Virus record (IMG/VR): IMGVR_UViG_3300044701_000569
Coordinates: 293,560-357,559 of that record
Strand: one strand, 5' to 3'
DNA length: 64,000 bases
The translations under genes and the position numbers were made by a program. The notes below the pieces were generated by a model that had not been told where the DNA came from, did no database searches, and saw only the letters and a program-made list of their open reading frames with translations. This document shows, piece by piece, positions 37,478 to 50,716 of this stretch (position 1 is the first letter of the stretch; each line of letters starts with the position of its first letter).

Positions 37478-38587
37478 TTATTTACCAATTGTAGATGACT
37501 CAAAAACACTGTTATGAGTTTGAGTACAGCGTACAAAGGTAGTGCATTTGCTAAGTTGCTTCAGCGTCTTAGCGCCTGCGTATGTACAGGTACTGCGCAA
37601 TCCGCCCAGTATATCCTGCACAGTATTTAGTACCGCTCCTTTGTAGGGTACTAAAACAGTACGGCCTTCTGAAGACCTGTAGTCCTTCAGTCCGCCAAAA
37701 TGTTTGTTGTTGGCACTTTCTGAACTCATACCGTAAAACTGTACAAATTTCTTTTCTTGAATTTTACGTTTACGAGCTGTTAGATGGTCTCCAACTTCGT
37801 ATTCTAATTCATTAGTTTCGTAAAACTTAGAGATAACTTCGCCCCCGCCTTCGTCGTGTCCTGCCAGCATACCACCAAGCATTACAAAGTCGGCACCGGC
37901 AGCAAATGCTTTAGCAACATCACCAGGACAAGTGCATCCACCATCAGCAATAATATGACCGCCCAGACCGTGAGCTGCGTCGGCACATTCAATAACTGCA
38001 CTAAGTTGTGGGTACCCAACGCCAGTCTGGATACGAGTAGTACAGACACTACCAGGACCAATACCAACTTTAACAATATCTGCACCTCGCAGTATTAACT
38101 CCTGTGTCATGTCACCAGTAACAACGTTGCCGGCAATAATTGTATGTAGTGGAAATTCTTTACGAATCTTTGAAACATAGTCAGCAAAGTGTTCGCTATA
38201 ACCGTTAGCAATGTCAATACAGATAAACTTAATATCAGTAAAGTGGGCGCATAAGTCAACTAACTTATCAAAGTCGGCAGCACCTGTTCCGGTAGAAATA
38301 GCAAGATGATTACCGCTAAATGGATAACCCTTACTCCAATCATTATAGTCGTAGTTTTTAACTAAACATGTAAACATTTTATGCTTTGCTAATGCATCAG
38401 CTATAGCAAATGTACCAACACCATCCATGTTAGCGGCCATAATAGGTATGCCAGTCCATGTTTGTTCACTGTGCTTGAACGTATATGTGCGCTCAAGGGT
38501 TACTTCTTTACGACTAGATAGAGTTGACCGCTTAGGACGAATTAATACGTCCTTGTAATCAAGTTTAACGTCTTGATCGATTCTCAT
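37478..38587 (-). CDS. guaC: GMP reductase
   Basis: [44 protein letters not shown]. Confidence 0.95.
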
Positions 38588-38841
38588 TACTTCCTCTTAT
38601 TTGAGTATGGATTGGGGAAATTATCTTCATTTCTTGCCTGCTTTTTAAGCCATCTTGATCTAGCAGCAGCCTTGGCCTTCTTACGTCTTATACTGGGCTT
38701 TTCGTAAAATTCTTTTTCTCTGAGTTCTTGAAGAATTCCAGAATCTTGTACCTTCTTCTTGAATCTTCTAATGGCTCCATTAATGTCTCCATTACGGACT
38801 TCAACTACAAGTCCTCTAAACTCATCATTCACCTTCTTCAC
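38587..38841 (-). CDS. rpsU: 30S ribosomal protein bS21
   Basis: [25 protein letters not shown]. Confidence 0.92.
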
Positions 38842-39229
38842 TGATACCTCCTAGAGCTGATGAAAGAATACTGATGTTGTATATTCTGTTGCTACTTATA
38901 TGATTATAAACAGAGTCTACAGCATTTGTCAACCAATAAGTTTTTGGTTTGGCAATCATAAAACTGAGTAAGTCTTTTATATAAGGTGGACATTGGTCTA
39001 CGTCCACTATAACAATCTGACAAAGATTAAACACAGACAATAACCAATCTATATCGGCAGAAGCATACTGTTGCTTATCATAAAGATATACATTGATGCT
39101 TTCTTTTGTGTTTGGAAAGACTTCATTTTGTATTTGTTGTTGTAAATCTGCACTAGGAAAAATCACTAGCACACCAACAGCATCACTGAATACCTTGTCA
39201 GGCGGTGTAATTAAATTAATGTTTGTCAC
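38825..39229 (-). CDS. hypothetical protein
   Basis: 134 aa, LITPPD N-terminus. Confidence 0.75.
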   Translation of the reverse strand: MTNINLITPPDKVFSDAVGVLVIFPSADLQQQIQNEVFPNTKESINVYLYDKQQYASADIDWLLSVFNLCQIVIVDVDQCPPYIKDLLSFMIAKPKTYWLTNAVDSVYNHISSNRIYNISILSSALGGISEEGE

Positions 39230-40554
39230 TTGTCTCTACGTAGCTTATTAAAGAGTGTGTTTTCATCTTGTTCAGAATTTTGTTTGTAACCAATTTCTTC
39301 TTCCCAAGGTAATTTATCAATCTTCCCTTTTATATATAGAGTCTTGTACATCTTTAGAGTTTGATCTGGATGAGCAGCCTTCCAAGAAGTTTTAGAATTT
39401 TGAAATTCGCTATCTAATTCTTTTGCATCGTATTCTGCAGAGCGACGCAGTTCATCTTCACTCAACGTTTCGCTGTCTGACAGTTCCAAGGACTTTAAAG
39501 GTTTTTTTTTGAGCTCGGTGTCTACTGGGGATTCTTCTTGTTGTGCGACTGGAGTTTCAACTCGTGGTGGCTCTGGGTCTCTTTCAACCACTTCTCTGAC
39601 ATCTGGCTCAGCTTCTTTGGCGGGTTCTTGTGCTGTGTTGACTTGTGGGGTTTGTGTTTGAACCAACTCATTTTGTGTCTCCTTTACAGGGAATGGCCAG
39701 GGAGAAGTAGTTACTGTTGGTTCCTGTTTTAGATTAAGCTCGTATAGATCACTTGCCATTTCTTTTTCAGATTCTTCTTCCTGTCTACGTTTCTTTTCAG
39801 CCTTATGGTAGTCCCAGGTATATTGACTTGCAATTAGTAGTAGAACTGCTAATGGATCAAATACAAAGATTAAAATAACAATGACCCAACGCACTGCTTC
39901 TTCAAGCATATTTTCGTTTGCACGATCACCGTATATAAACTCAGCAATGTATTTGATTGGGCCAACTTCTGCTTCAATTTTACGAATATTTGCTGCAATA
40001 GGCGCACGTTGCTCGTTTATAGATGCTATCTCTTTTTGTGCAGCAGCGATTTCATCAACCAATCGTTTTCTGTCTGCAGCCTGACTTCTACGTATTTGCA
40101 GAGCACGTTCTGCTCCACTTTGAGCAGTTGTGCGACTCATTGTTTGGTTAACTACGTCGTCCAGTTGTTGTATTAGTTTTTGGTTAGCTTCAATAATAGT
40201 TCTTTGATTTCGAATTCTTTCGTCATAGACTACAATGCTTGCTTGTGCGTCACTGCCTACTAGTGTTTGATCAAGGTGCGCTTTTGATAAGAATCCAAAA
40301 ATGCCCATAGAAGTAATAAACATAAGAACAAACACTGCAACGGCTAGATAGGTCTTTAGCCACCATGCTGCAATGCTCCAATATCTATGTAGCCATACTG
40401 CGGTTACTAGCTTACCAACTTCTAGTGCTACGCCCATAACCACAATTGGTACTACAGCGGCAGCGAAAATGGCTGCAAGGCCAGCTACGCTGTAATATAT
40501 TGCTATCACACTAATGCTCAGTGCAGATAGAAAGGTAATTAAGGTCATGAACAT
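39226..40554 (-). CDS. membrane-anchored coiled-coil protein
   Basis: Three N-terminal TM helices, coiled coil, EVGPIKYIA, FVFDPLA TM, acidic tail. Confidence 0.8.
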   Translation of the reverse strand: MFMTLITFLSALSISVIAIYYSVAGLAAIFAAAVVPIVVMGVALEVGKLVTAVWLHRYWSIAAWWLKTYLAVAVFVLMFITSMGIFGFLSKAHLDQTLVGSDAQASIVVYDERIRNQRTIIEANQKLIQQLDDVVNQTMSRTTAQSGAERALQIRRSQAADRKRLVDEIAAAQKEIASINEQRAPIAANIRKIEAEVGPIKYIAEFIYGDRANENMLEEAVRWVIVILIFVFDPLAVLLLIASQYTWDYHKAEKKRRQEEESEKEMASDLYELNLKQEPTVTTSPWPFPVKETQNELVQTQTPQVNTAQEPAKEAEPDVREVVERDPEPPRVETPVAQQEESPVDTELKKKPLKSLELSDSETLSEDELRRSAEYDAKELDSEFQNSKTSWKAAHPDQTLKMYKTLYIKGKIDKLPWEEEIGYKQNSEQDENTLFNKLRRDK

Positions 40555-40615
40555 CTAGTGATTTCTCCTCAGTTAACTATTTAAACTCTTTTCGTATGTC
40601 ATTTATCTACGCAGT

Positions 40616-41047
40616 TTAGTTTCTTCTCATTTGGCTAATTTCTTTAGCCTGTTCATCATTAATAATTGGTACTGCATTGCTCTTGTGCATAGTAGCAATA
40701 CCCTTAATAAGAGTACCAGTATAGCGATTTGGTTCTTTCTTAGCACAAGCATGTTGTAAATCTTTAATCTCAGAATTTAAACTAGGAATACGAGGACCTG
40801 TATCTCTGCGGTATGCAGGTGTTTCTAAAAGTTTAGGAGTAGCTTCTACGGGTTTTTTGCTACGTTTTCCATTAAGATAGTCCGTAAACTCTTCTAGGGT
40901 CATTGGACTTAGACGGATGCTCTTTAAGAATTTATTATGTTCGCGCCAACGTAATTCTAATGCGGCTTGTTTGGCCTTGGTTAGTTTAGTCTTGCGTTTC
41001 TTGTAATTAGTTGTGGTAAGATATGGCCCAACCAAATGCATTGTCAT
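40616..41047 (-). CDS. conserved phage protein (HKSNAVP motif)
   Basis: KGIATMHKSNAVPI; promoter TTGACA-N16-TATAGT at 41079-41106. Confidence 0.8.
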   Translation of the reverse strand: MTMHLVGPYLTTTNYKKRKTKLTKAKQAALELRWREHNKFLKSIRLSPMTLEEFTDYLNGKRSKKPVEATPKLLETPAYRRDTGPRIPSLNSEIKDLQHACAKKEPNRYTGTLIKGIATMHKSNAVPIINDEQAKEISQMRRN

Positions 41048-41112
41048 AAAAATCTCCGCTATAGTGACACGTTGTATTACTATAGCAGAGTTTTGTAATC
41101 TGTCAAGTATGT

Positions 41113-41562
41113 TTAGTTACACCAACTAGTTTTGGCTTCACCGTAATACTCGCGAGCAAATCCATTTTCTATCAGCATTGCTCTCAAACTCTTGCCGTCC
41201 AAAAGAACATCACCTAACACACGCCCGCCGTACTTGTCCCAATCCATAAGAACAACTTGACGTTTGGTAGCCTGAGCGATCATTTTCTTTGTGAAAGCTG
41301 ATGCATTCTGTCCTCGTTGATCTTCTTGAGGACATTTAGCTCTAAATCCCTTTTCTGGAGTATCAACTCCAAAAACTCTAACTGAAAGTTCCTTTTTAAG
41401 AGGATCTGGAAGGAAGGGTGCTTCAAACGCAACTGTATCTCCGTCAATTACTCGCGTGATGTTTGCATCGTATGTTACGCCTGCTTTTTGCTTTTGCGCT
41501 AACACTGGTGTAACTAAAACTAGTGATAAAACTAGAGTTGTTAAAAACTTCATCATATACAT
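41113..41562 (-). CDS. secreted thermonuclease (SNase family)
   Basis: Signal peptide, VIDGDT, GVDTPE, DKYGGRVL. Confidence 0.92.
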   Translation of the reverse strand: MYMMKFLTTLVLSLVLVTPVLAQKQKAGVTYDANITRVIDGDTVAFEAPFLPDPLKKELSVRVFGVDTPEKGFRAKCPQEDQRGQNASAFTKKMIAQATKRQVVLMDWDKYGGRVLGDVLLDGKSLRAMLIENGFAREYYGEAKTSWCN

Positions 41563-41620
41563 ATTTCCTTATAACCTTTTTAGGTTTATCATAATGTATG
41601 TATATTTATGATATGCAGAT

Positions 41621-41647
41621 AAAAAGAAAGGCGCCCTAGAGCGCCTT
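41621..41647 (-). terminator. intrinsic terminator ending the tmRNA transcript
   Basis: AAGGCGC-tctagg-GCGCCTT then TCTTTTT. Confidence 0.75.
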
Positions 41648-41999
41648 CCTCACTGTTCTGTTGCCCGGTAAGTGAACCGCGAACCTGCTGTTTCTTAGGC
41701 AGCTAGCGCAAAGTTGTTGTCATTGACAGCAACGTTTACGAATAGTTCAGGAGTAAAGGTTTTTGTGCCGTTTACTTGATTTTGCTTCTTTTACGGAGAT
41801 CGCCTACCGTGTTGCCGTCTCTACTATCTCACCCAATCGATCCTAGTTCAGCCCCATCATAAAAGGACAATTAGCATGACAGTTACAATGACTGTAAATC
41901 CTACTAAAAATCTTACTAGATCGTCTTCCATAACTATCCTTTTATGGTGGAGCTGGCGGGAGTTGCACCCGCGTCTTGAATGCCTTCGCTTTGAAGGGA
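41648..41999 (-). ncRNA. ssrA: circularly permuted (two-piece) tmRNA
   Basis: Acceptor piece ...GCGGGTGCAACTCCCGCCAGCTCCACCA ends at 41945 and precedes the coding piece, which starts GGGGCTG at 41855. G3:U70 pair present. Tag frame ends NDNNFALAA-TAA at 41695. Outer ends approximate. Confidence 0.92.
41857..41931 (-). CDS. putative 24-aa TM peptide inside the tmRNA intervening segment
   Basis: AAGGA SD, ATG, MEDDLVRFLVGFTVIVTVMLIVLL, TGA. Confidence 0.5.
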   Translation of the reverse strand: MEDDLVRFLVGFTVIVTVMLIVLL

Positions 42000-42012
42000 T
42001 TACAACAATTTC

Positions 42013-42216
42013 TTAAACAGGCTGAATGTTACTTGCCTGTTGTCCTTTTGGACCCATTGTGATTTCAAATCTTACACTCTGTCCTTCTTGTAGGCTTTTG
42101 TAGCCACTAGAAGAAATTTGTGAAAAATGAGCAAACACATCTGCGCCGCCATTGTCTGGAGTAATGAAACCAAAACCTTTAGCTTCGTTAAACCATTTTA
42201 CTTTACCTGTTACCAT
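42013..42216 (-). CDS. cspA: cold-shock protein
   Basis: GKVKWFN, KGFGFI (RNP1), VFAHFS (RNP2). Confidence 0.96.
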
Positions 42217-42224
42217 TTTATTTT

Positions 42225-42285
42225 CCTATGTGTTATATATTACTAATATTTGTTCAGTTCATCTAACTCTTATATAACACACAGG
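42225..42285 (-). promoter_or_regulatory. 15-bp RBS-occluding stem in the cspA leader
   Basis: CCUGUGUGUUAUAUA pairs with UAUAUAACACAUAGG, which includes the SD AGG. Confidence 0.65.
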
Positions 42286-42379
42286 TTACTAACTAGTCTC
42301 AATTTATCTTACTAAAATTTTCGTATAGTGCATTATTGCACAGTTTGTAGATTTGTCAACCTACATTCTATTTAGCTGG

Positions 42380-42511
42380 TTAATCATATGGCTTTAAAAA
42401 ATCATCATTTTTTGAATCTTCTTCAAAATTGCTCCAATCATAGGTTGCTAACTTATAAATCCAAAAAGCATGTAATCCTATTACAAAAGTCAAAAGAAAT
42501 AGATTTGTCAT
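42380..42511 (-). CDS. small single-TM protein, 43 aa
   Basis: MTNLFLLTFVIGLHAFWIYKLATYDWSNFEEDSKNDDFLKPYD; ATGA-coupled. Confidence 0.65.
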   Translation of the reverse strand: MTNLFLLTFVIGLHAFWIYKLATYDWSNFEEDSKNDDFLKPYD

Positions 42512-42729
42512 ATTTTTTTATTCTCATATGTATAAACGAGTTTAGTTACATCATCAACCTTGACTAACCATCCGTCTTTGTTTACTATGTATACATCGCC
42601 AGGTTTGTAGAGTGCGCTTTTTCCGCCTTCTACTCCTTCTCTAGTTACACCCATAACTTCTCCAGGCCATTCGCCTTCAACTCTCCAGCTGGTCCCAGCT
42701 TGTGATATGTTATAATCTACCCACAGCAT
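42508..42729 (-). CDS. hypothetical protein
   Basis: 73-aa ORF in operon. Confidence 0.7.
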   Translation of the reverse strand: MLWVDYNISQAGTSWRVEGEWPGEVMGVTREGVEGGKSALYKPGDVYIVNKDGWLVKVDDVTKLVYTYENKKI

Positions 42730-43383
42730 TTAGACTCCACTGGCTAAAACAATCTTACAGATATGTTCTAACCGTTCAATGTGTTCAAAAGTACGCCACG
42801 GGCTTGTATCTATAGCAACAACCCCATGTCCTTTAATACCTATAATATCATGAGCTATGACACCATTCTTGTCAACACCTAATCTATCAATTGTTTCATC
42901 TGCCAGCTTTTGACTGATAGGCGGCACATCTGGTACATTTGGTGCTACCTTTGTGTAACGTCCTAGTTCTGGAAAGTCCTTTACCAGTTTGTCTAGTTCA
43001 ATGCCCTTGTGCATTGCTGCTACACAATATGTTGGATGAAAGTGCATTACTACTCTAACATCGTTGCTGTGTTGTCCCATTTCTTTTTGCAGTCCAAAAT
43101 GCAACGGAATCTCTCCGCTGGGCTTTAGATTTGCACTGATGTCAGTGTATTCCATTTCCTCCCAAGCATAATTAAACGCTGCTGAACCAACACCACTATT
43201 AATAGTTCTCCAGATTCTAATTTTCTTAAACAGCTCTGGTTGCATTGTTTGCTTACGAATGCCGCTGGGAGTGATATAGAAATGATCTCTATCATGATGT
43301 CGGATACTAACATTGCCGTCGCGGCTAGTAATCCAGTTTCTATTATAAGCCGAAACCATTGTTTCGCATATTGTTTCTAACAT
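42730..43383 (-). CDS. class II aldolase/adducin family protein
   Basis: DGNVS, ITPSG, PSGEIPLH, VMHFHP, GHGV. Confidence 0.9.
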   Translation of the reverse strand: MLETICETMVSAYNRNWITSRDGNVSIRHHDRDHFYITPSGIRKQTMQPELFKKIRIWRTINSGVGSAAFNYAWEEMEYTDISANLKPSGEIPLHFGLQKEMGQHSNDVRVVMHFHPTYCVAAMHKGIELDKLVKDFPELGRYTKVAPNVPDVPPISQKLADETIDRLGVDKNGVIAHDIIGIKGHGVVAIDTSPWRTFEHIERLEHICKIVLASGV

Positions 43384-44549
43384 TAATGTTTACCTATTAA
43401 ACTTGCTATTTCACGAGCTGTGTATGCGCTTAATGTCCATCCTAGGTGCCCGTGACCTGTGTTATACCACACACCTAGGTTTCTTGTGCTTCTAGTAACT
43501 ATGGGCATCATATTAGGAGTCATTGGCCTTAGACCTGCCCAAGGAGTAATTGATTCCATGTTTACTTCAGGAAACAGTCTCTCTGTCCATTCTTTCAAAG
43601 GCCTTATGCGGTCCTGGATAATGTCTGTGTTATATCCATTTAATTCCGCTGTTCCTGCTACCCGTAAACGTCCTTCACCTAGACGAGCAGTAACAATTTT
43701 TGCTTCATCATCTAATAAACTTACCCAGGGTGCTGGTCCTGGATCGTTAATTGTGATGCTGTATCCTTTAACAGGATAGATAGGCAAATCGTCGCCTACT
43801 CTTTTAGCAATGGCTCTGCTGCCTGCGCCTGCACAAACTACAACAGGCCCTGTTTCTAAGAACTGGTAAATGTCATAGTTTTTTATTGTCTTTTGTTTAA
43901 ATTTTACATTGTACTTCGTTTCAAGTACCTTTGATAATTCAACGCAGAACTTGTGTATGTCGCCGGTGAAGTCTTGTTCATTATAAAAACCGCCAACAAC
44001 AGTATCAATGCTGTTCTTTAGAGCAGGCTCAATTGAAAGTATTTCGTCCTTGCCTACTTCCCAACGATTCAATCCTGCTTCTTTGTAAAGTCTGTTTGTA
44101 TCTCTTGCAAACTCTAGTTCTTTTTCTGAACGATAGATATGTAGGATACCTTTTTCAACTTTATCAAATTCAATACCTTCTTCTAGTGCAATCTGTTTAT
44201 AGAGTGCGTGTGCCTCTATAGCCATCTCACAGGTCTTTCTAGTATTGTTTTCTCTATTTTTGATGTGTGTTAAAAACTGAGCAAGCCAGCGATACTTCTC
44301 TAGGCTAGGCTTAGGATTAATCAGTAGTGGTGCATCTTTCTTAAAGAGCCACTTAACACCCTTGTGTACGCTGCGCCAACTATTCCAAACTTCAGCATTA
44401 CTTGCACTGAGCTGTCCGCCATTAGCAAAAGAGGTAGCCATTGCTGGATACCTCTTTTCGTCAACGACAGTAACTTGGCAACGTGACTTTGCCAAATAGT
44501 AAGCGGTGGTGATGCCTGTGATTCCGGCGCCGATTACTGTTACTTGCAT
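43383..44549 (-). CDS. dadA: D-amino acid dehydrogenase
   Basis: GAGITG, TSFANGGQL, YPVKGYS, WAGLRPMTP, TGHGHLGWT; start at ATG 44549. Confidence 0.92.
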   Translation of the reverse strand: MQVTVIGAGITGITTAYYLAKSRCQVTVVDEKRYPAMATSFANGGQLSASNAEVWNSWRSVHKGVKWLFKKDAPLLINPKPSLEKYRWLAQFLTHIKNRENNTRKTCEMAIEAHALYKQIALEEGIEFDKVEKGILHIYRSEKELEFARDTNRLYKEAGLNRWEVGKDEILSIEPALKNSIDTVVGGFYNEQDFTGDIHKFCVELSKVLETKYNVKFKQKTIKNYDIYQFLETGPVVVCAGAGSRAIAKRVGDDLPIYPVKGYSITINDPGPAPWVSLLDDEAKIVTARLGEGRLRVAGTAELNGYNTDIIQDRIRPLKEWTERLFPEVNMESITPWAGLRPMTPNMMPIVTRSTRNLGVWYNTGHGHLGWTLSAYTAREIASLIGKH

Positions 44550-44553
44550 TAAT

Positions 44554-44751
44554 TTACATAGTGTTCTTTTTGTCCTGGATTTCTCCACGACGGGCCTTGG
44601 ATAGCTTACCAAGCTCACCTAGTGCCTTGCGAGCGCGAGCGGCTGCTGCCTTAACGCCCTTACCTTCAAATGCTTCTGATTCCTTAAGATAATTGTTAAA
44701 TGCTAGAACAATTTCTTCGTGTACGGAATTTGTTGTGGTTGTATCAGTCAT
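44554..44751 (-). CDS. histone H1-like (Hc1-type) basic protein
   Basis: FEGKGVKAAAARARKAL...RRGEIQ. Confidence 0.7.
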   Translation of the reverse strand: MTDTTTTNSVHEEIVLAFNNYLKESEAFEGKGVKAAAARARKALGELGKLSKARRGEIQDKKNTM

Positions 44752-45341
44752 GTGTTTTCTCCTGTAATGATATTATATATTTCTTTCCAACTCTTCACCC
44801 TAGGAATCATGGCATCAACATAATCCATGTTATGTCCATGTTCCACAAGCAACGGTTTAAGTCCAACATTGAGTCCTGCTTTACAGTTGTCAATCTTGTC
44901 TTCGATCCACCAGCATTGGGTATCACGATACTGTTCAAGAACCTTGTCCTTGTCTGCACCTGTGTCTAGAAAGATAAAGTGATCAAAAGCTGTCTCACCA
45001 AATAGTTTGCGCACATTCATCTTGCGCAATCGTTGAGCGTTTCGATCTTTGCTTAGGCTGGTGATGCAATGAAAAACATAACCATATTCTTCATGCAATC
45101 TCTTAACGTAATGCTGTGCATCACGTAGTGCAGGAAGGAAACCAATGCTTGCTGATTCGTTAAAAATCTTAATCAGCTTCCTACCCTGTTCGTCATCGAT
45201 GCCATAACGTTTACCAATAGAGTAAACGAATTGTCCACCGTCTTGTTTTCTAAATCCGTGTTCTTCCATCCAACAGTGGAAGGCCCATTCCCAATCAAGA
45301 ATGACACCGTCTGCGTCTGTAAGTATTACTCTGTCTTTCAT
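44748..45341 (-). CDS. HAD-family phosphatase (5'-nucleotidase-like)
   Basis: DADGV, ITS, WIED. Confidence 0.85.
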   Translation of the reverse strand: MKDRVILTDADGVILDWEWAFHCWMEEHGFRKQDGGQFVYSIGKRYGIDDEQGRKLIKIFNESASIGFLPALRDAQHYVKRLHEEYGYVFHCITSLSKDRNAQRLRKMNVRKLFGETAFDHFIFLDTGADKDKVLEQYRDTQCWWIEDKIDNCKAGLNVGLKPLLVEHGHNMDYVDAMIPRVKSWKEIYNIITGENT

Positions 45342-45372
45342 CTGTTCTCTCTTTGGCTATTACTACTTTTAA

Positions 45373-45400
45373 AGTATAGCACAAAGTTTGGATTTGTCAA
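45373..45400 (-). promoter_or_regulatory. sigma70-like promoter TTGACA-N16-TATACT
   Basis: Read directly; -35 overlaps the PAAR gene stop. Confidence 0.8.
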
Positions 45401-46446
45401 GAGTAATATAACTTGAGTCCAGACTCGTAGTTACCTTTATACATTGTGGTAACCTTGCCTCTTTGTTTGGATTTATTTCTATCGTAGCTGAGATGAATCC
45501 AAATTGTGTTGCCGTGCTCAAAAATAATTTGATCGTAATCTATGTTATCTCTTATCCACTGCGCTCTCGGCAAGTAGTCACGTGGTGCTAATCCAGGCCA
45601 CTGTATGTCCATAGCCATTCCGTTGCAGTGTTGGCTTCCGCTTGAACCTTGTCTAAATCCACTATTAATTCTAATTCCGGGATATTTTCGGTTTACTGGT
45701 TCTGCTACATTTTCTGCTAGATATTTTAAGTTACCCATTAGATCCTGTATTGAATAGCCCTTTTGTGACTGCAATTGATGTTTGAAAACACAGTTAAGAG
45801 TAAAGTCTTTTACGGTGTAGTTAGTTGAGAGCCTATAATTGTAATCAATACTTGAGGGTAGATTAGATGTATCTACATCTCTACGCTCAGGAGCATCACC
45901 TTGTCTTCCGCTGTTATCCACTGTAGAGGGAGAAGTTGGAGCACCTGGTTGTGTGCTTCTATCGTTAGGCGAACTATATGCACTAAATCTAGGATTTGAT
46001 CCCCCGCCGCTTGTTGGTGCACCGTCTTCGCCGCCTTCATCATCTTCAGCGGCACCAGCACCTTCATTGACAATGGCATTTGAACCTGCTGCTGAATAGG
46101 GATCAGTAGCTACTAATACTCCTTCTACAAGTACAGCACTACCGTTGCTTACTGAAAGGTCTCCAACAAAAACTGTAGACTGAAGTTCAACCACAGTAGT
46201 TGCGCCACAGATTCTATCATCGTCATGCCTGTGTACAGGGTTGCTATAGACAAAAACAGATGGGGCGCCTTCAGCAGTTTTAGGATTACAATGCGGGCTA
46301 GCAGGGCACAAACTATCCGGCTGGGCGGGATCCTCGTGTTCTATTACAGGGATACTATTAACAAATACTGTTTGGGGATTTTCAGCAATTAACTGACCCC
46401 CACTGTGTGTATTGGGATCTCCTTGTACTGCCCACAACTTGCTCAT
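45397..46446 (-). CDS. PAAR spike-tip protein fused to peptidase M15
   Basis: GDPNTHSGG, TVFVNSIPV, PVHRHDD..CGA; G/D/S linker; SGFR..SQH..GMAMD...WIHLS. Confidence 0.88.
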   Translation of the reverse strand: MSKLWAVQGDPNTHSGGQLIAENPQTVFVNSIPVIEHEDPAQPDSLCPASPHCNPKTAEGAPSVFVYSNPVHRHDDDRICGATTVVELQSTVFVGDLSVSNGSAVLVEGVLVATDPYSAAGSNAIVNEGAGAAEDDEGGEDGAPTSGGGSNPRFSAYSSPNDRSTQPGAPTSPSTVDNSGRQGDAPERRDVDTSNLPSSIDYNYRLSTNYTVKDFTLNCVFKHQLQSQKGYSIQDLMGNLKYLAENVAEPVNRKYPGIRINSGFRQGSSGSQHCNGMAMDIQWPGLAPRDYLPRAQWIRDNIDYDQIIFEHGNTIWIHLSYDRNKSKQRGKVTTMYKGNYESGLKLYYS

Positions 46447-46455
46447 TTCAACACC

Positions 46456-46746
46456 TTAAACCATTTGGATTCCGCTGGTACTTGAAATGTATTGCTTGGC
46501 CATTTCGCCATCGGTCTTGTGTACAAAAACTAAAGTGTTCTTGTTTATTTTAATTCTAGCACTAGGATTAATAGTAAAACTAAAAGGTCCTAGGCCCAGT
46601 CCTTGGTGTGTTGCCATTACAACCATTGGTTTTTCAATCGTAATAGTAGTTGAGTCTTCCTCTACGAAGCGAGCAACAAGTTCCTCTCCTCCAGTAGTTT
46701 TCATAGATACTGCGTCTTGTGATTTGTATGGTGCTTCTATTAACAT
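46456..46746 (-). CDS. Sm/LSm-like fold protein
   Basis: KTTGGEELVAR...IEKP...YISSTSGI. Confidence 0.65.
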   Translation of the reverse strand: MLIEAPYKSQDAVSMKTTGGEELVARFVEEDSTTITIEKPMVVMATHQGLGLGPFSFTINPSARIKINKNTLVFVHKTDGEMAKQYISSTSGIQMV

Positions 46747-46749
46747 AAA

Positions 46750-47010
46750 TTAAGTTCCTATTGTGTGTCCAGTTCCGTTAAATCCGGTTTCATCTATATA
46801 CTTGGCTAGCTGATCGTAGCCACCAATATACTTTTCTCCTAAGAAAATTTGTGGCACTGAACGTGCATCAGGAACTGCTTCAAGTAGTTCTTCCTTAGTG
46901 TATCCGTCGCCAATTTTCTTTTCTTCAAACGGGATATTTCTTGCCTTTAATAGGGCCTTGGCTCTATCACAGTATGAGCAGTTATATTTGCTCCAAATAG
47001 TTGCTAGCAT
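46750..47010 (-). CDS. glutaredoxin
   Basis: CSYC, SVPQIF, IGGY. Confidence 0.93.
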   Translation of the reverse strand: MLATIWSKYNCSYCDRAKALLKARNIPFEEKKIGDGYTKEELLEAVPDARSVPQIFLGEKYIGGYDQLAKYIDETGFNGTGHTIGT

Positions 47011-47037
47011 TTATATGTTTCCTTTATTAACAATTAA

Positions 47038-48138
47038 TTATAGCGCAGGTAGTTCGTCGTAGTCAATAGCATCACTCATAACACCAATGACATAATTAGT
47101 TGACTCATTTTCTTGCAGTGCTGTCTGCTTCTTGCTGGTATCGCTGTGCTTGTTGAACCAAGGAATAGGAGTAGACTTAGGAGCAGGGTTCCAATACTTA
47201 ATACCTATCTGCTTCAGCGCATCAGTTGCAGTGAAGTCTACAAAGTCTTTTAAGATACCTGCATTCAAACCAATAACTGGTCCCTTCTGGAATAGATAGT
47301 CTGCCCATTCTTTTTCTTCTCTAATAACATCCTTGTAAATCTGTATTACTTCTGATTCACAATCTTTAGCGGCTTGAGCAAAGCGATTGTCTTCTTTAAC
47401 TACTTGATTAATCAAGTAGGCAGTCCAACCTTTGTGTAGCAACTCGTCTTGTAGGATCAAGCTAATGATGTTACCATTACCAATAAAGATCTTATTCTCT
47501 ACCATAGCAAGGCTTGTTGCAAATGATACCATAAAGCGGAATGCTTCCAATCCATAACTAGCATGTAGAGCTAGATAGATTGCTTTAACGTGTTCGTACT
47601 CATCAACTGCTTCGCCTAGTTCTTTGCGACAGTTAATAAGATGTAGCTTATCATAATACAAACCAATGCTTGATGCCATGTCTACAATTTCTTGTGTGTC
47701 GTGAATGGTGTTGAACACATCCTTAGGTACATTGTAGATGTTGCGGATGATATGACTGTAGCTCTTACTGTGAATGTTAGTTTCAAAGAAGCCCCAGTTA
47801 TACATCAGTGCTTCTACTTCTGGAAGACTGCACACAGGCGTAAACACCTGCGTTGGACCTCTACCCTGAAGGCTATCCAAAGCAGTTTGGCGAAGTAGGT
47901 TACTAGTAAAAATATGCTTGACAGCATCACTGGCCTCTTTAAAGTCGTTTGCATCTTTGGTTAATGAGATTTCTTCAGGTTGCCAAAAGAATCCACGTGC
48001 AGTGCTATCATAGTCTGCAATCTTTTTGTACTTGACTTCTTCAAAACGCTGAATCGTTACTGGACCTTCGGGATCCAAAAACATTTTACGTGATAGATAA
48101 TCTGTCTTTGTGCTTAGATTATATTGCTGTTTGCTCAT
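47038..48138 (-). CDS. nrdB: ribonucleotide reductase class Ia beta subunit
   Basis: FFWQPEE, LDSLQGR, ETNIHSKSY, DELLH. Confidence 0.96.
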   Translation of the reverse strand: MSKQQYNLSTKTDYLSRKMFLDPEGPVTIQRFEEVKYKKIADYDSTARGFFWQPEEISLTKDANDFKEASDAVKHIFTSNLLRQTALDSLQGRGPTQVFTPVCSLPEVEALMYNWGFFETNIHSKSYSHIIRNIYNVPKDVFNTIHDTQEIVDMASSIGLYYDKLHLINCRKELGEAVDEYEHVKAIYLALHASYGLEAFRFMVSFATSLAMVENKIFIGNGNIISLILQDELLHKGWTAYLINQVVKEDNRFAQAAKDCESEVIQIYKDVIREEKEWADYLFQKGPVIGLNAGILKDFVDFTATDALKQIGIKYWNPAPKSTPIPWFNKHSDTSKKQTALQENESTNYVIGVMSDAIDYDELPAL

Positions 48139-48377
48139 TTATGATTTCCTGTTATTTTTTCAATTTCATTTACTATAGTCTTAAGCGTAGTCATTCTCCA
48201 CTGCCTAGATTCAGGAATTTCAATTTTAAATTCCTGTTCAATTGATATCATTATTTCAGCTAGATCAAGACTATCTGCACCTAATTCATTTATTAAATTA
48301 GAGTGCGGTTTAATGTCACTGATATTAACTCCTAATTGGTCAACTAGAAGAGTTTTAATTCTACTTTCTATGTTCAT
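48135..48377 (-). CDS. acyl carrier protein
   Basis: ELGADSLD phosphopantetheine motif, EQEFKIEIP; ATGA overlaps with nrdA and nrdB. Confidence 0.85.
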   Translation of the reverse strand: MNIESRIKTLLVDQLGVNISDIKPHSNLINELGADSLDLAEIMISIEQEFKIEIPESRQWRMTTLKTIVNEIEKITGNHK

Positions 48378-50716
48378 AGTTTGCAGGATTCGCAATCGTC
48401 GTCTTCAAAATTGACTTCTTGTTGAGGTTGAAACTCTACTTCAGGATGGAATCCATTTATCTTTTCTTCTACTGCTTTACTGCCTGCTTTGTTAATCAGA
48501 CTGTAGTAGAAAGTTTTAATTCCCCATAGTTGACTCTGCATCAAGTTCTTAGCAATTAGTGTTGTAGGAACTTTGCGTTCAGTAAAGTGTGCAGGATTAT
48601 AGAAAGTATTAGTTGAAATACTTTGATCTACATATGCCTGTAGTACAGCCGCTGTCTTTAGATAGCCAGCACAGTCTTTTTGTTCCCACATGAGCTGATA
48701 CTTATTCTTCAACTTTTGATACTCAGGAACAACTTGTGTAAATGAGCCTGCCTTTGATTCTTTAGTACTGATAAGACTCATTGGCATTTCAATACCGTTA
48801 GTGCTGTTAATAACAACACTACTCGATTCTACAGGAGCAATAGCCATTTGAGTTGCATTTCTAACTCCGTACTGTTTCATATCTGCTCGCAGAGTTTCCC
48901 AGTCTAGTTCTGGAGTAAAGTCTGCTAATTCATTAACACCTTGGGCTCTAAGTTCCCAGGGAAACTGTCCCTTACCATAACGTGTCTTGTCGCTATTCAA
49001 ACAGGGGCCGCGCTCTTTGGCTAATTCAACCGTTGCTTCAGTTAGATAGTATGCTTGATGTTCCATCCAAGTCTTAACTTCTTGTAGTGCATCCTTCTCG
49101 CCATACTTAAGGCTGCGCTTTGCATGCCAGTAGGCTAGGTTAGTAACACCAATACCTAATGGACGAATTTCATCATTACTTAATTTACTTTGTATACTCA
49201 AAAAGTCCTGATAGTCAAGAATATTATTAAGGCTGCGATGTAAAATTCTACAGGCTCTGCGCATGTCTTCTGGATTGCGGAATGCTCCCCAATTGATGCT
49301 GCCTAGTGTGCATAGGGCAATACGACCTGCATCGTCATCTAAACGCTTGAAGGGCTTAGTTGGCAGTAGGATTTCGCAACAGAGGTTGCTCTGATAAATG
49401 GTATCGTACTCAGGATCAAACGGACCTTGATTCATAACATTGTCAATAAACACAAGATAGATACGTCCTGTGTCTGTGCGCTCTTTGAGTATGCCACCTT
49501 TGAAAACATCTTCAGCATTCATAGTCTTCTTGCGCAGATCCTTACGCTTCTCATACTTTACATAGAGTTCTTCAAATAGCTTTGCATCTTTATAAAAAGC
49601 CTCGTACAAATCAGGTACTTCGTTTGGATCAAAGAAAGTTATGTTTTCTTTATTTTTAAATCTTCTCCAGAAGAAGGCACTAAGCACAACCCCATAATCC
49701 ATATGACGGACTCTTGTTTCTTCCGTTCCTTGGTTGTTTTTAAGTACGATGAGATCATCAAACTGATGATGCCAAATAGGATAGAATACAGTAGCACTTG
49801 CATTGCGGATACCTCCTTGTGAGCATGAGCGCAGATCACCAAACCATTTCTTCAAGAAGGGTATCATGCCAGTGTGCATAATTTCTCCGCCGCGGATGGG
49901 CGAACCTAGAGGCCTAAGACGACCAATTTCAAGACCAATGCCAGCACGTTTGCTGGCATACTTGGCCATCATCTCCCCACTAGCAAATATGCTATCCAAA
50001 TCGTCGTCACTGCGGATAAGAACACAACTAGAAAACTGTTTAGTAGGAGTCCCAAGCCCAGCCAACACAGGAGTAGCAAGAGTAAACAAACCATCTGAAG
50101 CACAGTTGTAGTACTCTTTGATGAGACGCATACGGGCCGTGTTAGGTTCTTCTTTATGAAATACAGTTGCGGCAGCAACCATATAACGAACTTGTGGTGT
50201 TTCATAGATTTCCTTTGTCGCACGATTGCGTACCAAATATTTTTCAATTAATTGTTCAATGGCAGCATACGAATACATTTCGTCTTTTTCGTGATCTATG
50301 ATCTCGTCCATTTTGTTCCAATCATCTTCCGAATACCATGTAAGAAGATCAGCTGTATATAATCCAACTTCAACATTTCTCTTTACAATGTCGTAGAGGC
50401 GGGGAGGCTCGTATGAGCCATAAACATCCTTTCTCAACATAGAGAGTCTTTGATTACCTGCTACGTATTGATAGTTAACATGACCAATGTCTGGGTTAGT
50501 TTCAACATCAATGAGGTCTACTACTGCTCGAAGTGTTATACCGTCAATCTCTTGTGTAGTAATACCGTCGTAGAAATGAGGTTGTGCTTTGATTTCAATC
50601 ATTGACTGACTAACATCTGCTATTCCGCTACAAACCTTAGCAACCTGTGCCTGCCACTTTTCAATTGTAAGTGGCTCAATTGTGCCGTTTCTTTTAGTTA
50701 CACTTATCTTGTTCAT
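48374..50716 (-). CDS. nrdA: ribonucleotide reductase class Ia alpha subunit
   Basis: ATP cone, QFSSCVL, QSNLCCEI, CTL, KTFYY, C-terminal CESCKL. Confidence 0.97.
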   Translation of the reverse strand: MNKISVTKRNGTIEPLTIEKWQAQVAKVCSGIADVSQSMIEIKAQPHFYDGITTQEIDGITLRAVVDLIDVETNPDIGHVNYQYVAGNQRLSMLRKDVYGSYEPPRLYDIVKRNVEVGLYTADLLTWYSEDDWNKMDEIIDHEKDEMYSYAAIEQLIEKYLVRNRATKEIYETPQVRYMVAAATVFHKEEPNTARMRLIKEYYNCASDGLFTLATPVLAGLGTPTKQFSSCVLIRSDDDLDSIFASGEMMAKYASKRAGIGLEIGRLRPLGSPIRGGEIMHTGMIPFLKKWFGDLRSCSQGGIRNASATVFYPIWHHQFDDLIVLKNNQGTEETRVRHMDYGVVLSAFFWRRFKNKENITFFDPNEVPDLYEAFYKDAKLFEELYVKYEKRKDLRKKTMNAEDVFKGGILKERTDTGRIYLVFIDNVMNQGPFDPEYDTIYQSNLCCEILLPTKPFKRLDDDAGRIALCTLGSINWGAFRNPEDMRRACRILHRSLNNILDYQDFLSIQSKLSNDEIRPLGIGVTNLAYWHAKRSLKYGEKDALQEVKTWMEHQAYYLTEATVELAKERGPCLNSDKTRYGKGQFPWELRAQGVNELADFTPELDWETLRADMKQYGVRNATQMAIAPVESSSVVINSTNGIEMPMSLISTKESKAGSFTQVVPEYQKLKNKYQLMWEQKDCAGYLKTAAVLQAYVDQSISTNTFYNPAHFTERKVPTTLIAKNLMQSQLWGIKTFYYSLINKAGSKAVEEKINGFHPEVEFQPQQEVNFEDDDCESCKL

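What the first reader, a model, noticed from the sequence alone, without database searches (positions are those of the whole stretch)
41856..41944. Protein-coding ORF hidden in the tmRNA intervening segment
Seen: the 89-nt spacer between CCA and G1 is nearly filled by SD (AAGGA)-N5-ATG and a 24-codon ORF, MEDDLVRFLVGFTVIVTVMLIVLL, a single TM helix. Its ends are inverted repeats (AUAAAAGGA / UCCUUUUAU), so the SD pairs with the ORF's last codons. Known: this segment is normally excised and treated as non-coding. Inference: a dual-function RNA in which tmRNA folding and peptide translation exclude each other. The peptide resembles type I toxin or regulatory membrane peptides and could report failed tmRNA maturation.
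Basis: partly seen in the sequence, partly recalled or inferred. Interest (0 to 1): 0.8.

Follow-up and report, generated by a model that had tools for sequence, protein, structure and literature searches.

The report
Membrane micropeptide gene inside phage tmRNA
The 89-base spacer that is cut out of a giant freshwater phage's two-piece tmRNA precursor holds a conserved 24-codon gene for a tiny membrane peptide, so a segment treated as disposable RNA also works as a messenger.

Summary
A permuted (two-piece) tmRNA gene lies on the minus strand. Its 89-nt intervening segment (41856-41944) holds AAGGA-N5-ATG and a 24-codon hydrophobic ORF. The stop codon UGA lies 1 nt before tmRNA residue G1.

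The ORF is not a chance product of a U-rich hairpin. Homologous spacers in about 40 viral and metagenomic contigs give 23 distinct sequences. These come from a clade of large freshwater phages with many different tmRNA tags. All 23 carry the same Shine-Dalgarno + ATG + 23/24-codon ORF + UGA arrangement.

- Invariant residues use 3-5 synonymous codons.
- Variable sites by codon position are 17/9/21.
- pN/pS is 0.07-0.41.
- Indels are in-frame or fall in the SD-ATG spacer.

Only the terminal stem, which pairs the SD with the last codons, is conserved as RNA structure.

Two near-identical relatives (99%) carry a different, also conserved, Cys-rich ORF in the same spacer. Other phage tmRNA lineages carry further spacer ORF families.

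I conclude that this is a genuine nested micro-gene, probably translated from the nascent precursor before the stem closes. What the peptide does, whether it is toxic, and any maturation-reporter role remain untested. I found no prior description.

The parts
41604..42037 (-). Permuted (two-piece) tmRNA gene, whole precursor as called by ARAGORN
   Evidence: RF04321 at 41695-42007, 127 bits; RF01850 at 41625-42070, 108 bits.
41945..42007 (-). Acceptor piece: 3' tRNA-like half with T-arm (T-loop UGCAACU), acceptor 3' strand CAGCUCC, discriminator A and encoded CCA ending at 41945
   Evidence: Alignment to RF04321; sequence.
41856..41944 (-). Intervening segment (IVS), 89 nt, lying between CCA and G1
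41937..41941 (-). Shine-Dalgarno AAGGA, 5 nt upstream of ATG, inside the 5' arm of the terminal stem
   Evidence: Sequence. Predicted P(unpaired) is 0.007 in the excised IVS. An SD is present in all 23 homologues.
41857..41931 (-). 24-codon ORF MEDDLVRFLVGFTVIVTVMLIVLL plus UGA stop (41859-41857), encoding a single-helix membrane micropeptide
   Evidence: Family conservation and coding signature.
41931..41944 (-). 5' arm of the terminal stem (UAAAAGGAUAGUUA)
41860..41873 (-). 3' arm of the terminal stem (UAAUUGUCCUUUUA), which is also codons 20-24 of the ORF
41625..41855 (-). Coding piece: 5' tRNA-like half starting at G1 (41855), then the mRNA-like domain and 3' hairpins
41695..41733 (-). tmRNA tag reading frame (V)AVNDNNFALAA plus stop
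   Evidence: positions 305-343 of the gene.
41624..41651 (-). Intrinsic-terminator-like hairpin plus U-run that ends the transcription unit
42013..42216 (-). Cold-shock-domain gene; its stop codon lies 5 nt before the tmRNA precursor, so it is probably co-transcribed
   Evidence: PF00313, 1.7e-29. The same abutting synteny occurs in 11 related TM-ORF loci, and with a 73-nt insertion in L127/L128.
42332..42359 (-). Sigma-70-like promoter TTGACA-16-(TG)AATAAT upstream of csp; a candidate promoter for csp + tmRNA precursor
   Evidence: 11/12 match; consensus match only.

Best explanation
The ORF is a genuine protein-coding micro-gene nested in the intervening segment of a phage-encoded two-piece tmRNA gene. 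It belongs to a conserved family of 23-24-residue peptides. The family has an acidic N-terminus, one basic or polar position, an invariant Gly11, and a hydrophobic helix that runs to the C-terminal V-L-L.

Proposed mechanism:
1. The unit is transcribed as csp, acceptor piece, IVS, coding piece, terminator.
2. The SD and AUG emerge about 65 nt before their pairing partner is made. Ribosomes can therefore load only on the nascent or unfolded precursor.
3. A ribosome terminating at UGA, 1 nt before G1, covers the acceptor 5' strand and the RNase P site.
4. Once the ribosome leaves, the terminal stem stacks on the acceptor stem. The precursor is then processed at CCA and G1.
5. The excised spacer is a closed hairpin with its SD buried, so it is translationally silent.

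Peptide output is thereby tied to tmRNA transcription and opposed by fast maturation.

Status of each step:
- Shown here: gene anatomy, family conservation, coding signature, conserved SD-sequestering stem.
- Inferred: co-transcription with csp, the kinetic window, membrane insertion.
- Unknown: what the peptide does. My guess is an accessory inner-membrane modulator used during infection. It is not needed for tmRNA function itself.
For: Homologous 87-90-nt spacers:
- They occur in L146 and L176, L258 and L259, L262, and 30 further viral contigs L265-L294.
- These give 23 distinct sequences, each with SD + ATG + 23/24 codons + UGA 1 nt before G1.
- 29 of the 30 loci L265-L294 are ARAGORN-called permuted tmRNAs, with many different tags.
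- The search pattern covered only the last 11 codons, so the intact SD, ATG and first 13 codons were not selected for.

Coding signature:
- Gly11 is invariant across 3 codons.
- Val14 and Val18 each use 4 codons, and Leu16 uses 5 Leu codons.
- Variable sites by codon position are 17/9/21.
- pN/pS is 0.34-0.41 in codons 2-13 and 0.07-0.25 in codons 14-22.
- Among L146, L176, L258 and L259, 6 of 8 variable sites are synonymous, although only 24% of sites are synonymous (binomial P about 0.004).
- Length changes are one in-frame codon or lie in the SD-ATG spacer.

Other evidence:
- Neutral-drift simulation at the observed divergence keeps an open frame with an equally hydrophobic core in only 0.23% of trials.
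- RNAalifold finds only the terminal stem conserved. The interior has no conserved structure (covariation term +1.31).
- The SD is paired (P unpaired 0.007 or less) in four of five family members.
- Carrier loci share 68-79% nucleotide identity with other parts of this phage genome. The ORF has therefore persisted across a diverged clade.
- The spacer can hold real genes. A Cys-rich ORF sits in the spacer of L127, L128, L135 and L136, with pN/pS 0.17-0.3 at pS 0.6-1.0.
- In an unbiased census, 11 of 50 spacers of 60 nt or more have an SD+ATG ORF of 20 or more codons, against 1.8% of shuffles.
Against: - There is no direct evidence of translation. The metatranscriptome contigs that match come from 90-95% relatives and do not cover a window-type spacer.
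- The window's copy is the most divergent member (9-13 of 24 residues identical). Against the other members its pN/pS is only 0.6-0.8, because pS is saturated.
- Conservation of Val14, Val18 and Val22 is partly forced by the search pattern.
- The last 3-4 codons are also constrained by the RNA stem.
- The SD is strongly sequestered in the folded RNA, so translation depends on an unproven kinetic window.
- The peptide matches no Pfam or PHROGs family.
- No cultured phage carries it.
Confidence: 0.8

Rival explanations
1. Non-coding structural hairpin. The spacer is only a processing substrate that extends the acceptor stem. A U-rich stem-loop happens to read as a hydrophobic ORF.
For: Nearly all permuted-tmRNA spacers, including 24-30-nt ones without an ORF, begin UAAAxxxx and end xxxxUUUAUGAU and form a terminal stem. 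The stop UGA comes from this conserved end motif. The fold z-score is -2.7. An ORF of this length arises in 0.4-0.7% of shuffles.
Against: The frame, SD, start and length are conserved in 23 distinct homologues, with synonymous-codon turnover and a 17/9/21 codon-position pattern. The interior has no conserved RNA structure. The drift simulation gives P = 0.0023.
Confidence: 0.04
2. The ORF is translated, but only the act of translation matters. It would act in cis like a leader peptide, with ribosome passage timing the folding or processing of the tmRNA precursor, and the peptide would be a by-product.
For: The SD is in the stem and the stop codon is next to the RNase P site. Different, unrelated ORFs occupy the same slot in 99%-identical relatives.
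Against: The amino-acid sequence is under purifying selection: pN/pS 0.07-0.41, invariant Gly11, conserved acidic head and hydrophobic helix. tmRNAs about 80% identical work with an ORF-less 62-nt spacer. The Cys-rich occupant also exists as a free-standing gene upstream of tmRNA.
Confidence: 0.08
3. Type I toxin-like module. The peptide would be a membrane-damaging toxin whose mRNA is kept silent by 5'-3' pairing. It would be released when tmRNA maturation or an RNA partner fails.
For: The peptide is 24 aa with one hydrophobic helix. The SD is buried by end-to-end pairing, as in hok, tisB and aapA1 mRNAs (the comparison rests on established knowledge).
Against: No antisense promoter stands above chance: 3 promoter-like sites were found against 4.1 expected, and the only plus-strand site near the segment scores 9/12. 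There is no paralogue or repeat of the module in the genome. The charge layout (acidic N-terminus, no C-terminal basic tail) differs from most type I toxins. The slot is filled by a soluble-looking Cys-rich protein in sister phages. A lytic jumbo phage has no obvious need for addiction.
Confidence: 0.12
4. Permissive gene slot. The spacer tolerates insertions, so small accessory genes (morons) settle there to ride a strong transcription unit. They would have no functional link to trans-translation.
For: At least six unrelated ORF families occur in spacers of different phage tmRNA lineages. Occupants swap between 99%-identical genomes. ORF-less relatives exist. A 22-codon hydrophobic ORF is inserted just upstream of the tmRNA in L127/L128.
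Against: The TM ORF has stayed in this exact slot across tmRNAs with many different tags. The Cys-rich ORF is always next to or inside a tmRNA gene in all 6 contexts examined. Both points suggest more than chance linkage. This reading is compatible with the ORF being a real gene and differs only on functional coupling.
Confidence: 0.35

Closest known systems
Intervening segment of permuted (two-piece) tmRNA genes (Alpha-/Betaproteobacteria, Cyanobacteria, marine phages; Keiler 2000; Sharkady & Williams 2004; PMC11915505; PMC9004378)
   Same: The gene order is acceptor piece, CCA, spacer, G1, coding piece. The spacer forms a hairpin that extends the acceptor stem and ends in the ...UUUAUGAU motif.
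   Different: The spacer is treated as non-coding. The 2025 database paper notes only a tRNA-Ala gene and a repetitive element inside spacers. Here the spacer carries an SD, a start codon and a conserved peptide gene.
Dual-function RNAs (SgrS/SgrT, RNAIII/delta-haemolysin, SR1/SR1P)
   Same: One transcript gives both a functional RNA and a small peptide, and RNA structure competes with translation.
   Different: Here the peptide is encoded in a part that is removed from the mature RNA. The two products are physically separated by processing, and the RNA partner is tmRNA, not a base-pairing regulator.
Group I introns with homing-endonuclease ORFs in the T-loop of tmRNA genes (PMC11915505)
   Same: An ORF sits inside a segment of a tmRNA gene that is absent from mature tmRNA.
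   Different: No intron family was detected here. Removal is by tRNA-type end processing, not self-splicing. The product is a 24-aa membrane peptide, not a mobility enzyme.
Type I toxin mRNAs with end-to-end pairing that hides the SD (hok, tisB, aapA1)
   Same: A small hydrophobic peptide whose SD is sequestered by pairing between the 5' and 3' ends of the RNA.
   Different: No antitoxin RNA was found. Toxicity is untested, and the charge layout and genomic context differ.
arfA: a non-stop mRNA whose product is controlled by trans-translation (PMC10107115 abstract)
   Same: This comparison is relevant to the sister Cys-rich spacer ORF. That ORF has no stop codon before the RNase P site, so processing would leave a non-stop message. 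In the window the stop sits 1 nt from the cut.
   Different: There is no evidence here that either spacer product is tagged. arfA is cut by RNase III, not by tRNA processing.
Mixed mRNA-tRNA operons (e.g. E. coli thrU-tyrU-glyT-thrT-tufB)
   Same: Stable-RNA precursors and coding sequences share one transcript.
   Different: Here the coding sequence lies inside a single RNA gene, between its two halves, and overlaps its processing helix.

Membership tests
Permuted (two-piece) tmRNA gene | tRNA-like domain with the 3' half (T-arm, acceptor 3' strand, CCA) encoded upstream of the 5' half | tested here: met
   RF04321 127.4 bits (cut-off 47) and RF01850 108 bits (cut-off 84). ARAGORN calls 'tmRNA*'.
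Permuted (two-piece) tmRNA gene | G3-U70 alanine identity pair and a tag frame ending ...ALAA-stop | tested here: met
   GGGGCUG pairs with CAGCUCC (G3 opposite U). Tag (V)AVNDNNFALAA*.
Permuted (two-piece) tmRNA gene | The spacer is removed, leaving two base-paired RNA pieces | not testable with these tools
   RNA contigs available come from relatives and are assembler contigs. One contig from a relative ends exactly at the CCA position 41945, which is only suggestive.
Spacer-encoded TM micropeptide family (defined here) | SD + ATG + 23-24 codons between CCA and G1; acidic N-terminus; Gly11; hydrophobic run ending V-L-L; UGA 1 nt before G1 | tested here: met
   The window peptide aligns without gaps to 17 of the 22 other members and with a single one-codon gap to the remaining 5. 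It shares 9-13 of 24 residues, including M1, G11, V14, V18, V22, L23 and L24.
Type I toxin-antitoxin system | Small hydrophobic peptide under 60 aa | tested here: met
   24 aa. Mean Kyte-Doolittle score of residues 8-24 is 3.0.
Type I toxin-antitoxin system | Antisense or overlapping small-RNA antitoxin | tested here: inconclusive
   Promoter-like sites are not above the shuffle expectation, and the only plus-strand site nearby scores 9/12. No strand-specific RNA data cover the spacer.
Type I toxin-antitoxin system | Growth inhibition or membrane damage on expression | not testable with these tools
   Needs an expression experiment.
Dual-function RNA | The same primary transcript yields a functional RNA and a translated peptide | tested here: inconclusive
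   Both parts are conserved. Translation is inferred from the evolutionary signature only.
Intron-encoded ORF in a tmRNA gene | Self-splicing group I intron fold around the ORF | tested here: not met
   The Rfam scan of the window returns only the two tmRNA families. The spacer is 89 nt.
Known phage or cellular protein families | Match to a Pfam or PHROGs profile | tested here: not met
   There were no hits at E of 1 or less for the window peptide or for the three subfamily representatives.

The most novel reading that the evidence does not exclude
The excised spacers of phage two-piece tmRNA genes are a previously unrecognised coding compartment. Several unrelated, selectively maintained micro-proteins are encoded between the two halves of the tmRNA: the TM peptide here, a Cys-rich protein, the MIKW/MFKW family and others. 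Their SD lies in, or just inside, the processing helix. Their reading frames end at, or run through, the RNase P site. Their synthesis would therefore be mechanistically coupled to tmRNA maturation. For the stop-less versions it would also be coupled to trans-translation itself, giving a built-in gauge of ribosome-rescue capacity during infection.
Probability: 0.35. Interest if true: 0.9.

Novelty: new variant of a known kind. Interest (0 to 1): 0.8.

Why it matters
tmRNA is one of the best-studied stable RNAs, and the spacer of its permuted gene form has been annotated as disposable. The data show that in a clade of large freshwater phages this spacer holds a selectively maintained membrane-micropeptide gene. 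Other phage tmRNAs hold other spacer ORFs.

- **Annotation.** Gene callers ignore ORFs under 30 codons, and tmRNA annotation masks the region, so these genes are systematically missed.
- **A natural competition system.** RNA processing and translation compete for the same 14-bp helix and the same RNase P site. This can be tested with simple stem and start-codon mutants.
- **A testable link to trans-translation.** Because the peptide is made from the tmRNA precursor, one can ask whether phages link small effector peptides to the ribosome-rescue pathway they import.

Tried and rejected
- **RNA evidence.** Four freshwater metatranscriptome runs held only contigs of 90-95% relatives covering csp and the tmRNA pieces. 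None covered a window-type spacer, so this was uninformative.
- **Protein family searches.** Pfam and PHROGs gave no match for any spacer peptide.
- **Paralogues.** tblastn and blastn of the spacer and peptide against the 357-kb genome found no second copy.
- **Cultured phages.** blastn of the window tmRNA and of an L258-type tmRNA against the GenBank phage set found only acceptor-arm matches. tblastn of the MFKW peptide found none.
- **Cellular genomes.** The degenerate TM-ORF pattern gave 0 hits in 185,579 species genomes. A second scan by acceptor sequence gave unrelated taxa plus one contig that is probably a misbinned phage, L262. A sample of 151 genomes of one proteobacterial class gave a single permuted tmRNA, with an ORF-less 53-nt spacer. 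This is too few for a host baseline.
- **Exact back-translation.** The window's N-terminus found nothing in viral contigs, and neither did a stem-anchored gapped pattern.
- **BFD-like [2Fe-2S] idea for the sister Cys-rich ORF.** This came from memory of the CxC...CGxC motif. It was not supported by Pfam, a PDB profile search, the AlphaFold2 model (pLDDT 70), Foldseek or VIA-align, or the Atlas.

Full report
**1. What is in the sequence**

The window is the last 64 kb of a 357,559-bp IMG/VR virus record, a jumbo phage with 39% G+C.

ARAGORN finds one permuted tmRNA at 41604-42037 on the minus strand, with tag (V)AVNDNNFALAA. Rfam gives tmRNA_permuted RF04321 at 127 bits and beta_tmRNA RF01850 at 108 bits.

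Read on the minus strand, the layout is as follows:
- The acceptor piece ends ...CAGCUCCACCA at 41945.
- The 5' tRNA-like half starts GGGGCUGAAC at 41855.
- The 89 nt between them (41944..41856) are the finding.
- AAGGA is at 41941-41937, followed by five bases, then ATG at 41931.
- 24 codons follow, encoding MEDDLVRFLVGFTVIVTVMLIVLL.
- The stop UGA at 41859-41857 lies one base before G1.

The spacer ends pair as a 14-bp stem. The whole spacer folds at -21 kcal/mol with z = -2.7. In the precursor fold, this stem stacks on the acceptor stem.

An ATG ORF of this length appears in 0.4-0.7% of dinucleotide shuffles, and in 0.1-0.4% when an SD is required.

**2. The terminal stem is a family-wide feature; the ORF is not**

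Scanning IMG/VR for the 5' end of this tmRNA gave 119 loci. ARAGORN called a permuted tmRNA in 78 of them.
- Their spacers are 25-153 nt long.
- Almost all begin UAAAxxxx and end xxxxUUUAUGAU, forming a hairpin that extends the acceptor stem.
- Most short spacers have no ORF.

The stop codon UGA is supplied by the conserved ...UGAU end motif. What is special here is that the 5' arm reads as a Shine-Dalgarno sequence and the loop as a reading frame.

**3. Nearest relatives carry a different gene in the same slot**

Two viral contigs, L127 and L128, are 98.7-99.5% identical to the window from 38751 to 48989. Both tmRNA pieces are included in that region.

Their spacer interior is replaced:
- It is 135 nt long.
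- It begins CCACCA-AAAGGA-N6-ATG.
- It encodes a 41-codon Cys-rich ORF (MVVCSCRDIRDS...CCGKCLEEFLFD) with no stop before G1. In the unprocessed precursor the frame runs on for 27 codons.

This ORF has homologues at 72-77% identity. Its positions are:
- L135 and L136: inside the spacers of divergent permuted tmRNAs.
- L129, L130, L133 and L137: immediately upstream of a permuted tmRNA.

Its pN/pS is 0.17-0.3, with pS 0.6-1.0. It is therefore a real gene, and the spacer can hold real genes.

**4. Homologues of the window's own ORF**

Several scans found spacers of 87-90 nt with the same architecture:
- A metagenome scan with the acceptor-arm pattern.
- A degenerate-codon scan of viral contigs.
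- A genome-collection scan.
- A scan with a pattern covering only the last 11 codons plus GGG.

Together they cover about 40 contigs and give 23 distinct sequences. All have an SD (AAGGAG, AAGGGA or AAAGGA), an ATG 4-7 nt downstream, 23 or 24 codons, and UGA one base before G1.

The subfamilies are:
- MNDDLTxLGIGVVVVLVVFALVLL: 13 sequences.
- MNDEVVKWLFGITVVLVVFAIVLL: 7 sequences.
- MDNEYSALVGFIVVIVVFALVLL: 2 sequences, one from a 353-kb contig.
- The window's peptide is the most divergent, with 9-13 of 24 residues identical. It shares LVGF with the third group.

29 of the 30 loci L265-L294 are ARAGORN-called permuted tmRNAs, with many different tags. The carrier loci share 68-79% nucleotide identity with other parts of this phage genome. 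They therefore form a diverged clade of large freshwater phages (one search places the window in freshwater metagenomes).

**5. Coding signature**

- Invariant Gly11 uses GGC, GGT and GGA.
- Val14 and Val18 each use four codons.
- Leu16 uses five Leu codons.
- Variable sites by codon position are 17/9/21.
- Pooled pN/pS is 0.34-0.41 for codons 2-13, which lay outside the search pattern.
- Pooled pN/pS is 0.07-0.25 for codons 14-22. Here the pattern forced some second-position U and GU, which is an ascertainment caveat.
- Among the four sequences found without that pattern (L146, L176, L258, L259), 6 of 8 variable sites are synonymous, although 24% of sites are synonymous. The binomial P is about 0.004 by my arithmetic.
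- Length differences are a single in-frame codon or lie between the SD and ATG.
- Starting from L176 and applying the observed 27 changes in 60 nt at random, an open frame with a core as hydrophobic as the window's survives in 0.23% of trials.
- RNAalifold on six spacers conserves only the terminal stem. The interior has no consensus structure (covariation term +1.31).

The interior is therefore conserved as protein, and the ends are conserved as both RNA and protein.

**6. Mechanism**

A promoter-like site, TTGACA-16-(TG)AATAAT, lies upstream of a cold-shock-domain gene. That gene's stop codon is 5 nt before the tmRNA precursor. An intrinsic terminator follows the tmRNA.

The csp-tmRNA abutment recurs in 11 related TM-ORF loci, and in L127/L128 with a 73-nt insertion between them. 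The precursor is thus probably already part of an mRNA.

In the folded spacer the SD is paired. P(unpaired) is 0.002-0.007 in the window, L146, L176 and L258, and 0.26 in L262.

I infer three things:
- Ribosomes load only while the 3' arm has not yet been transcribed or while the helix is open.
- A terminating ribosome covers G1 and the acceptor 5' strand.
- After processing, the excised hairpin is silent.

These steps are inferences from anatomy; none is shown experimentally. The peptide's role is unknown. It has the size and hydrophobicity of a single membrane helix, with an acidic head.

The ORF is not required for tmRNA function. L149, L223 and L241 have the same tag as L176 and about 80% identity to it, yet they carry a 62-nt spacer with no ORF. 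The phage has no SmpB gene, so its tmRNA must use the host's.

**7. Wider pattern**

I made an unbiased census of 99 unique spacers. Of these, 50 are 60 nt or longer, and 12 of the 50 carry an SD+ATG ORF of 20 or more codons. One of the 12 is a false spacer that reads into infC. The shuffle expectation is 1.8%.

The further families are:
- MIKWIxxSYNNWMAKKEAEVPKYL... and its longer forms in L190 and L226 (pN below pS).
- An ORF in L181 that has no stop inside the spacer.
- ORFs in L010/L121 and L096.

**8. Comparison with what is known**

Two-piece tmRNAs in aquatic phages are known (PMC9004378). The 2025 tmRNA database paper lists a tRNA gene and a repeat inside spacers but no coding sequence (PMC11915505).

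Full-text searches for permuted, two-piece or split tmRNA together with ORF, small protein or intervening sequence found no report of spacer-encoded peptides. The Sinorhizobium Ribo-seq work concerns the tag frame only.

The closest concepts are:
- dual-function RNAs;
- intron ORFs in tmRNA genes;
- type I toxin mRNAs with buried SDs;
- the non-stop arfA message;
- mixed tRNA-mRNA operons.

It is not a member of the intron class. Membership in the type I toxin class cannot be established.

**9. Verdict**

The coding interpretation is strongly supported by comparative evidence. Mutual exclusion of folding and translation is structurally plausible and its elements are conserved, but it is untested. 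The toxin and maturation-reporter ideas are unsupported.

I rate this a new variant of a known kind: a nested small gene in an RNA precursor, in a place where none had been described. Interest is 0.8.

Noticed in passing
L127:3022-3228(-) and L128; corresponds to window 41866-41936: In phages 99% identical to the window, the spacer interior is replaced by a 41-codon Cys-rich ORF (CxC...CCGxC) with its own SD. It has no stop before G1, so RNase P cleavage would leave a non-stop message. In the precursor the frame runs 27 codons into the tmRNA.
   Followed up: yes
L127/L128, insertion at window ~42008-42013 (between csp stop and tmRNA start): A 73-nt insertion carries a 22-codon hydrophobic ORF (MKAYQPIVAVLIVIFVLIHVFM) that starts 4 nt after the csp stop. 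The phages that lack the TM ORF in the spacer therefore have another tiny TM ORF just upstream. No homology between the two is evident.
   Followed up: partly
L129, L130, L133, L137 versus L127, L135, L136: The Cys-rich ORF is always adjacent to a permuted tmRNA. It is either immediately upstream, overlapping the precursor's 5' end, or inside the spacer. This suggests that the acceptor piece and the ORF have changed order during evolution.
   Followed up: partly
L042, L062, L078, L088, L112, L190, L226 (spacers of 111-177 nt): A second conserved spacer-ORF family (MIKWI.../MFKWL..., 27-47 aa, not hydrophobic) has AGGAG-N6-ATG. It sits in permuted tmRNAs with tags of alphaproteobacterial type (ANENFAPSGYALAA, GNENFAIAA).
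   Followed up: partly
L181, L096, L010/L121: Three further single-lineage spacer ORFs (37-50 codons) have an SD. Two of them lack a stop inside the spacer and read into the tmRNA 5' end.
   Followed up: no
window 41961-41967 (-): The T-loop of the tmRNA reads UGCAACU, with G at the position of the usual second U (psi55). The same T-loop pattern matched more than 120 metagenomic tmRNAs, both standard and permuted, so it is a common variant.
   Followed up: partly
window 42013-42216 (-): The stop codon of a cold-shock-domain gene lies 5 nt before the tmRNA precursor. The same abutting arrangement is present in 11 related TM-ORF loci, so the tmRNA precursor is probably the 3' part of the csp mRNA.
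   Followed up: partly
whole genome G000: No SmpB homologue is present in the 357-kb phage genome, although it encodes a complete tmRNA.
   Followed up: yes
L262 (CAZCDW010000126.1): A 7.6-kb contig filed as an uncultured Bifidobacterium MAG carries a tmRNA 74% identical to the window's, with tag VAVNDSKFALAA and a 23-codon spacer ORF. It is probably a misbinned phage contig.
   Followed up: partly
L135:1-2908: In one relative, the tmRNA with the Cys-rich spacer ORF sits downstream of ClpX-like, ribosomal protein S21, Hsp20 and ClpS genes. This is a proteostasis and translation module.
   Followed up: no
window 37481-46446 (-): Neighbouring genes include IMPDH/GMP-reductase-like, SNase-like nuclease, class II aldolase, FAD-dependent oxidoreductase (DAO) and a PAAR-motif protein. 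These are auxiliary metabolic genes typical of jumbo phages.
   Followed up: no
window 41863/41945, run X17: A metatranscriptome contig from a 90-95% relative joins 41945 (the CCA end) to 41863, skipping or replacing the spacer interior. Another contig from that run covers only the coding piece. This is compatible with a relative that has a different spacer, but it is not interpretable as processing.
   Followed up: partly
window 41876-42016 (+): A 46-codon ORF lies antisense to the spacer and acceptor piece. Its conservation was not examined, and it has no SD in the expected place by eye.
   Followed up: no
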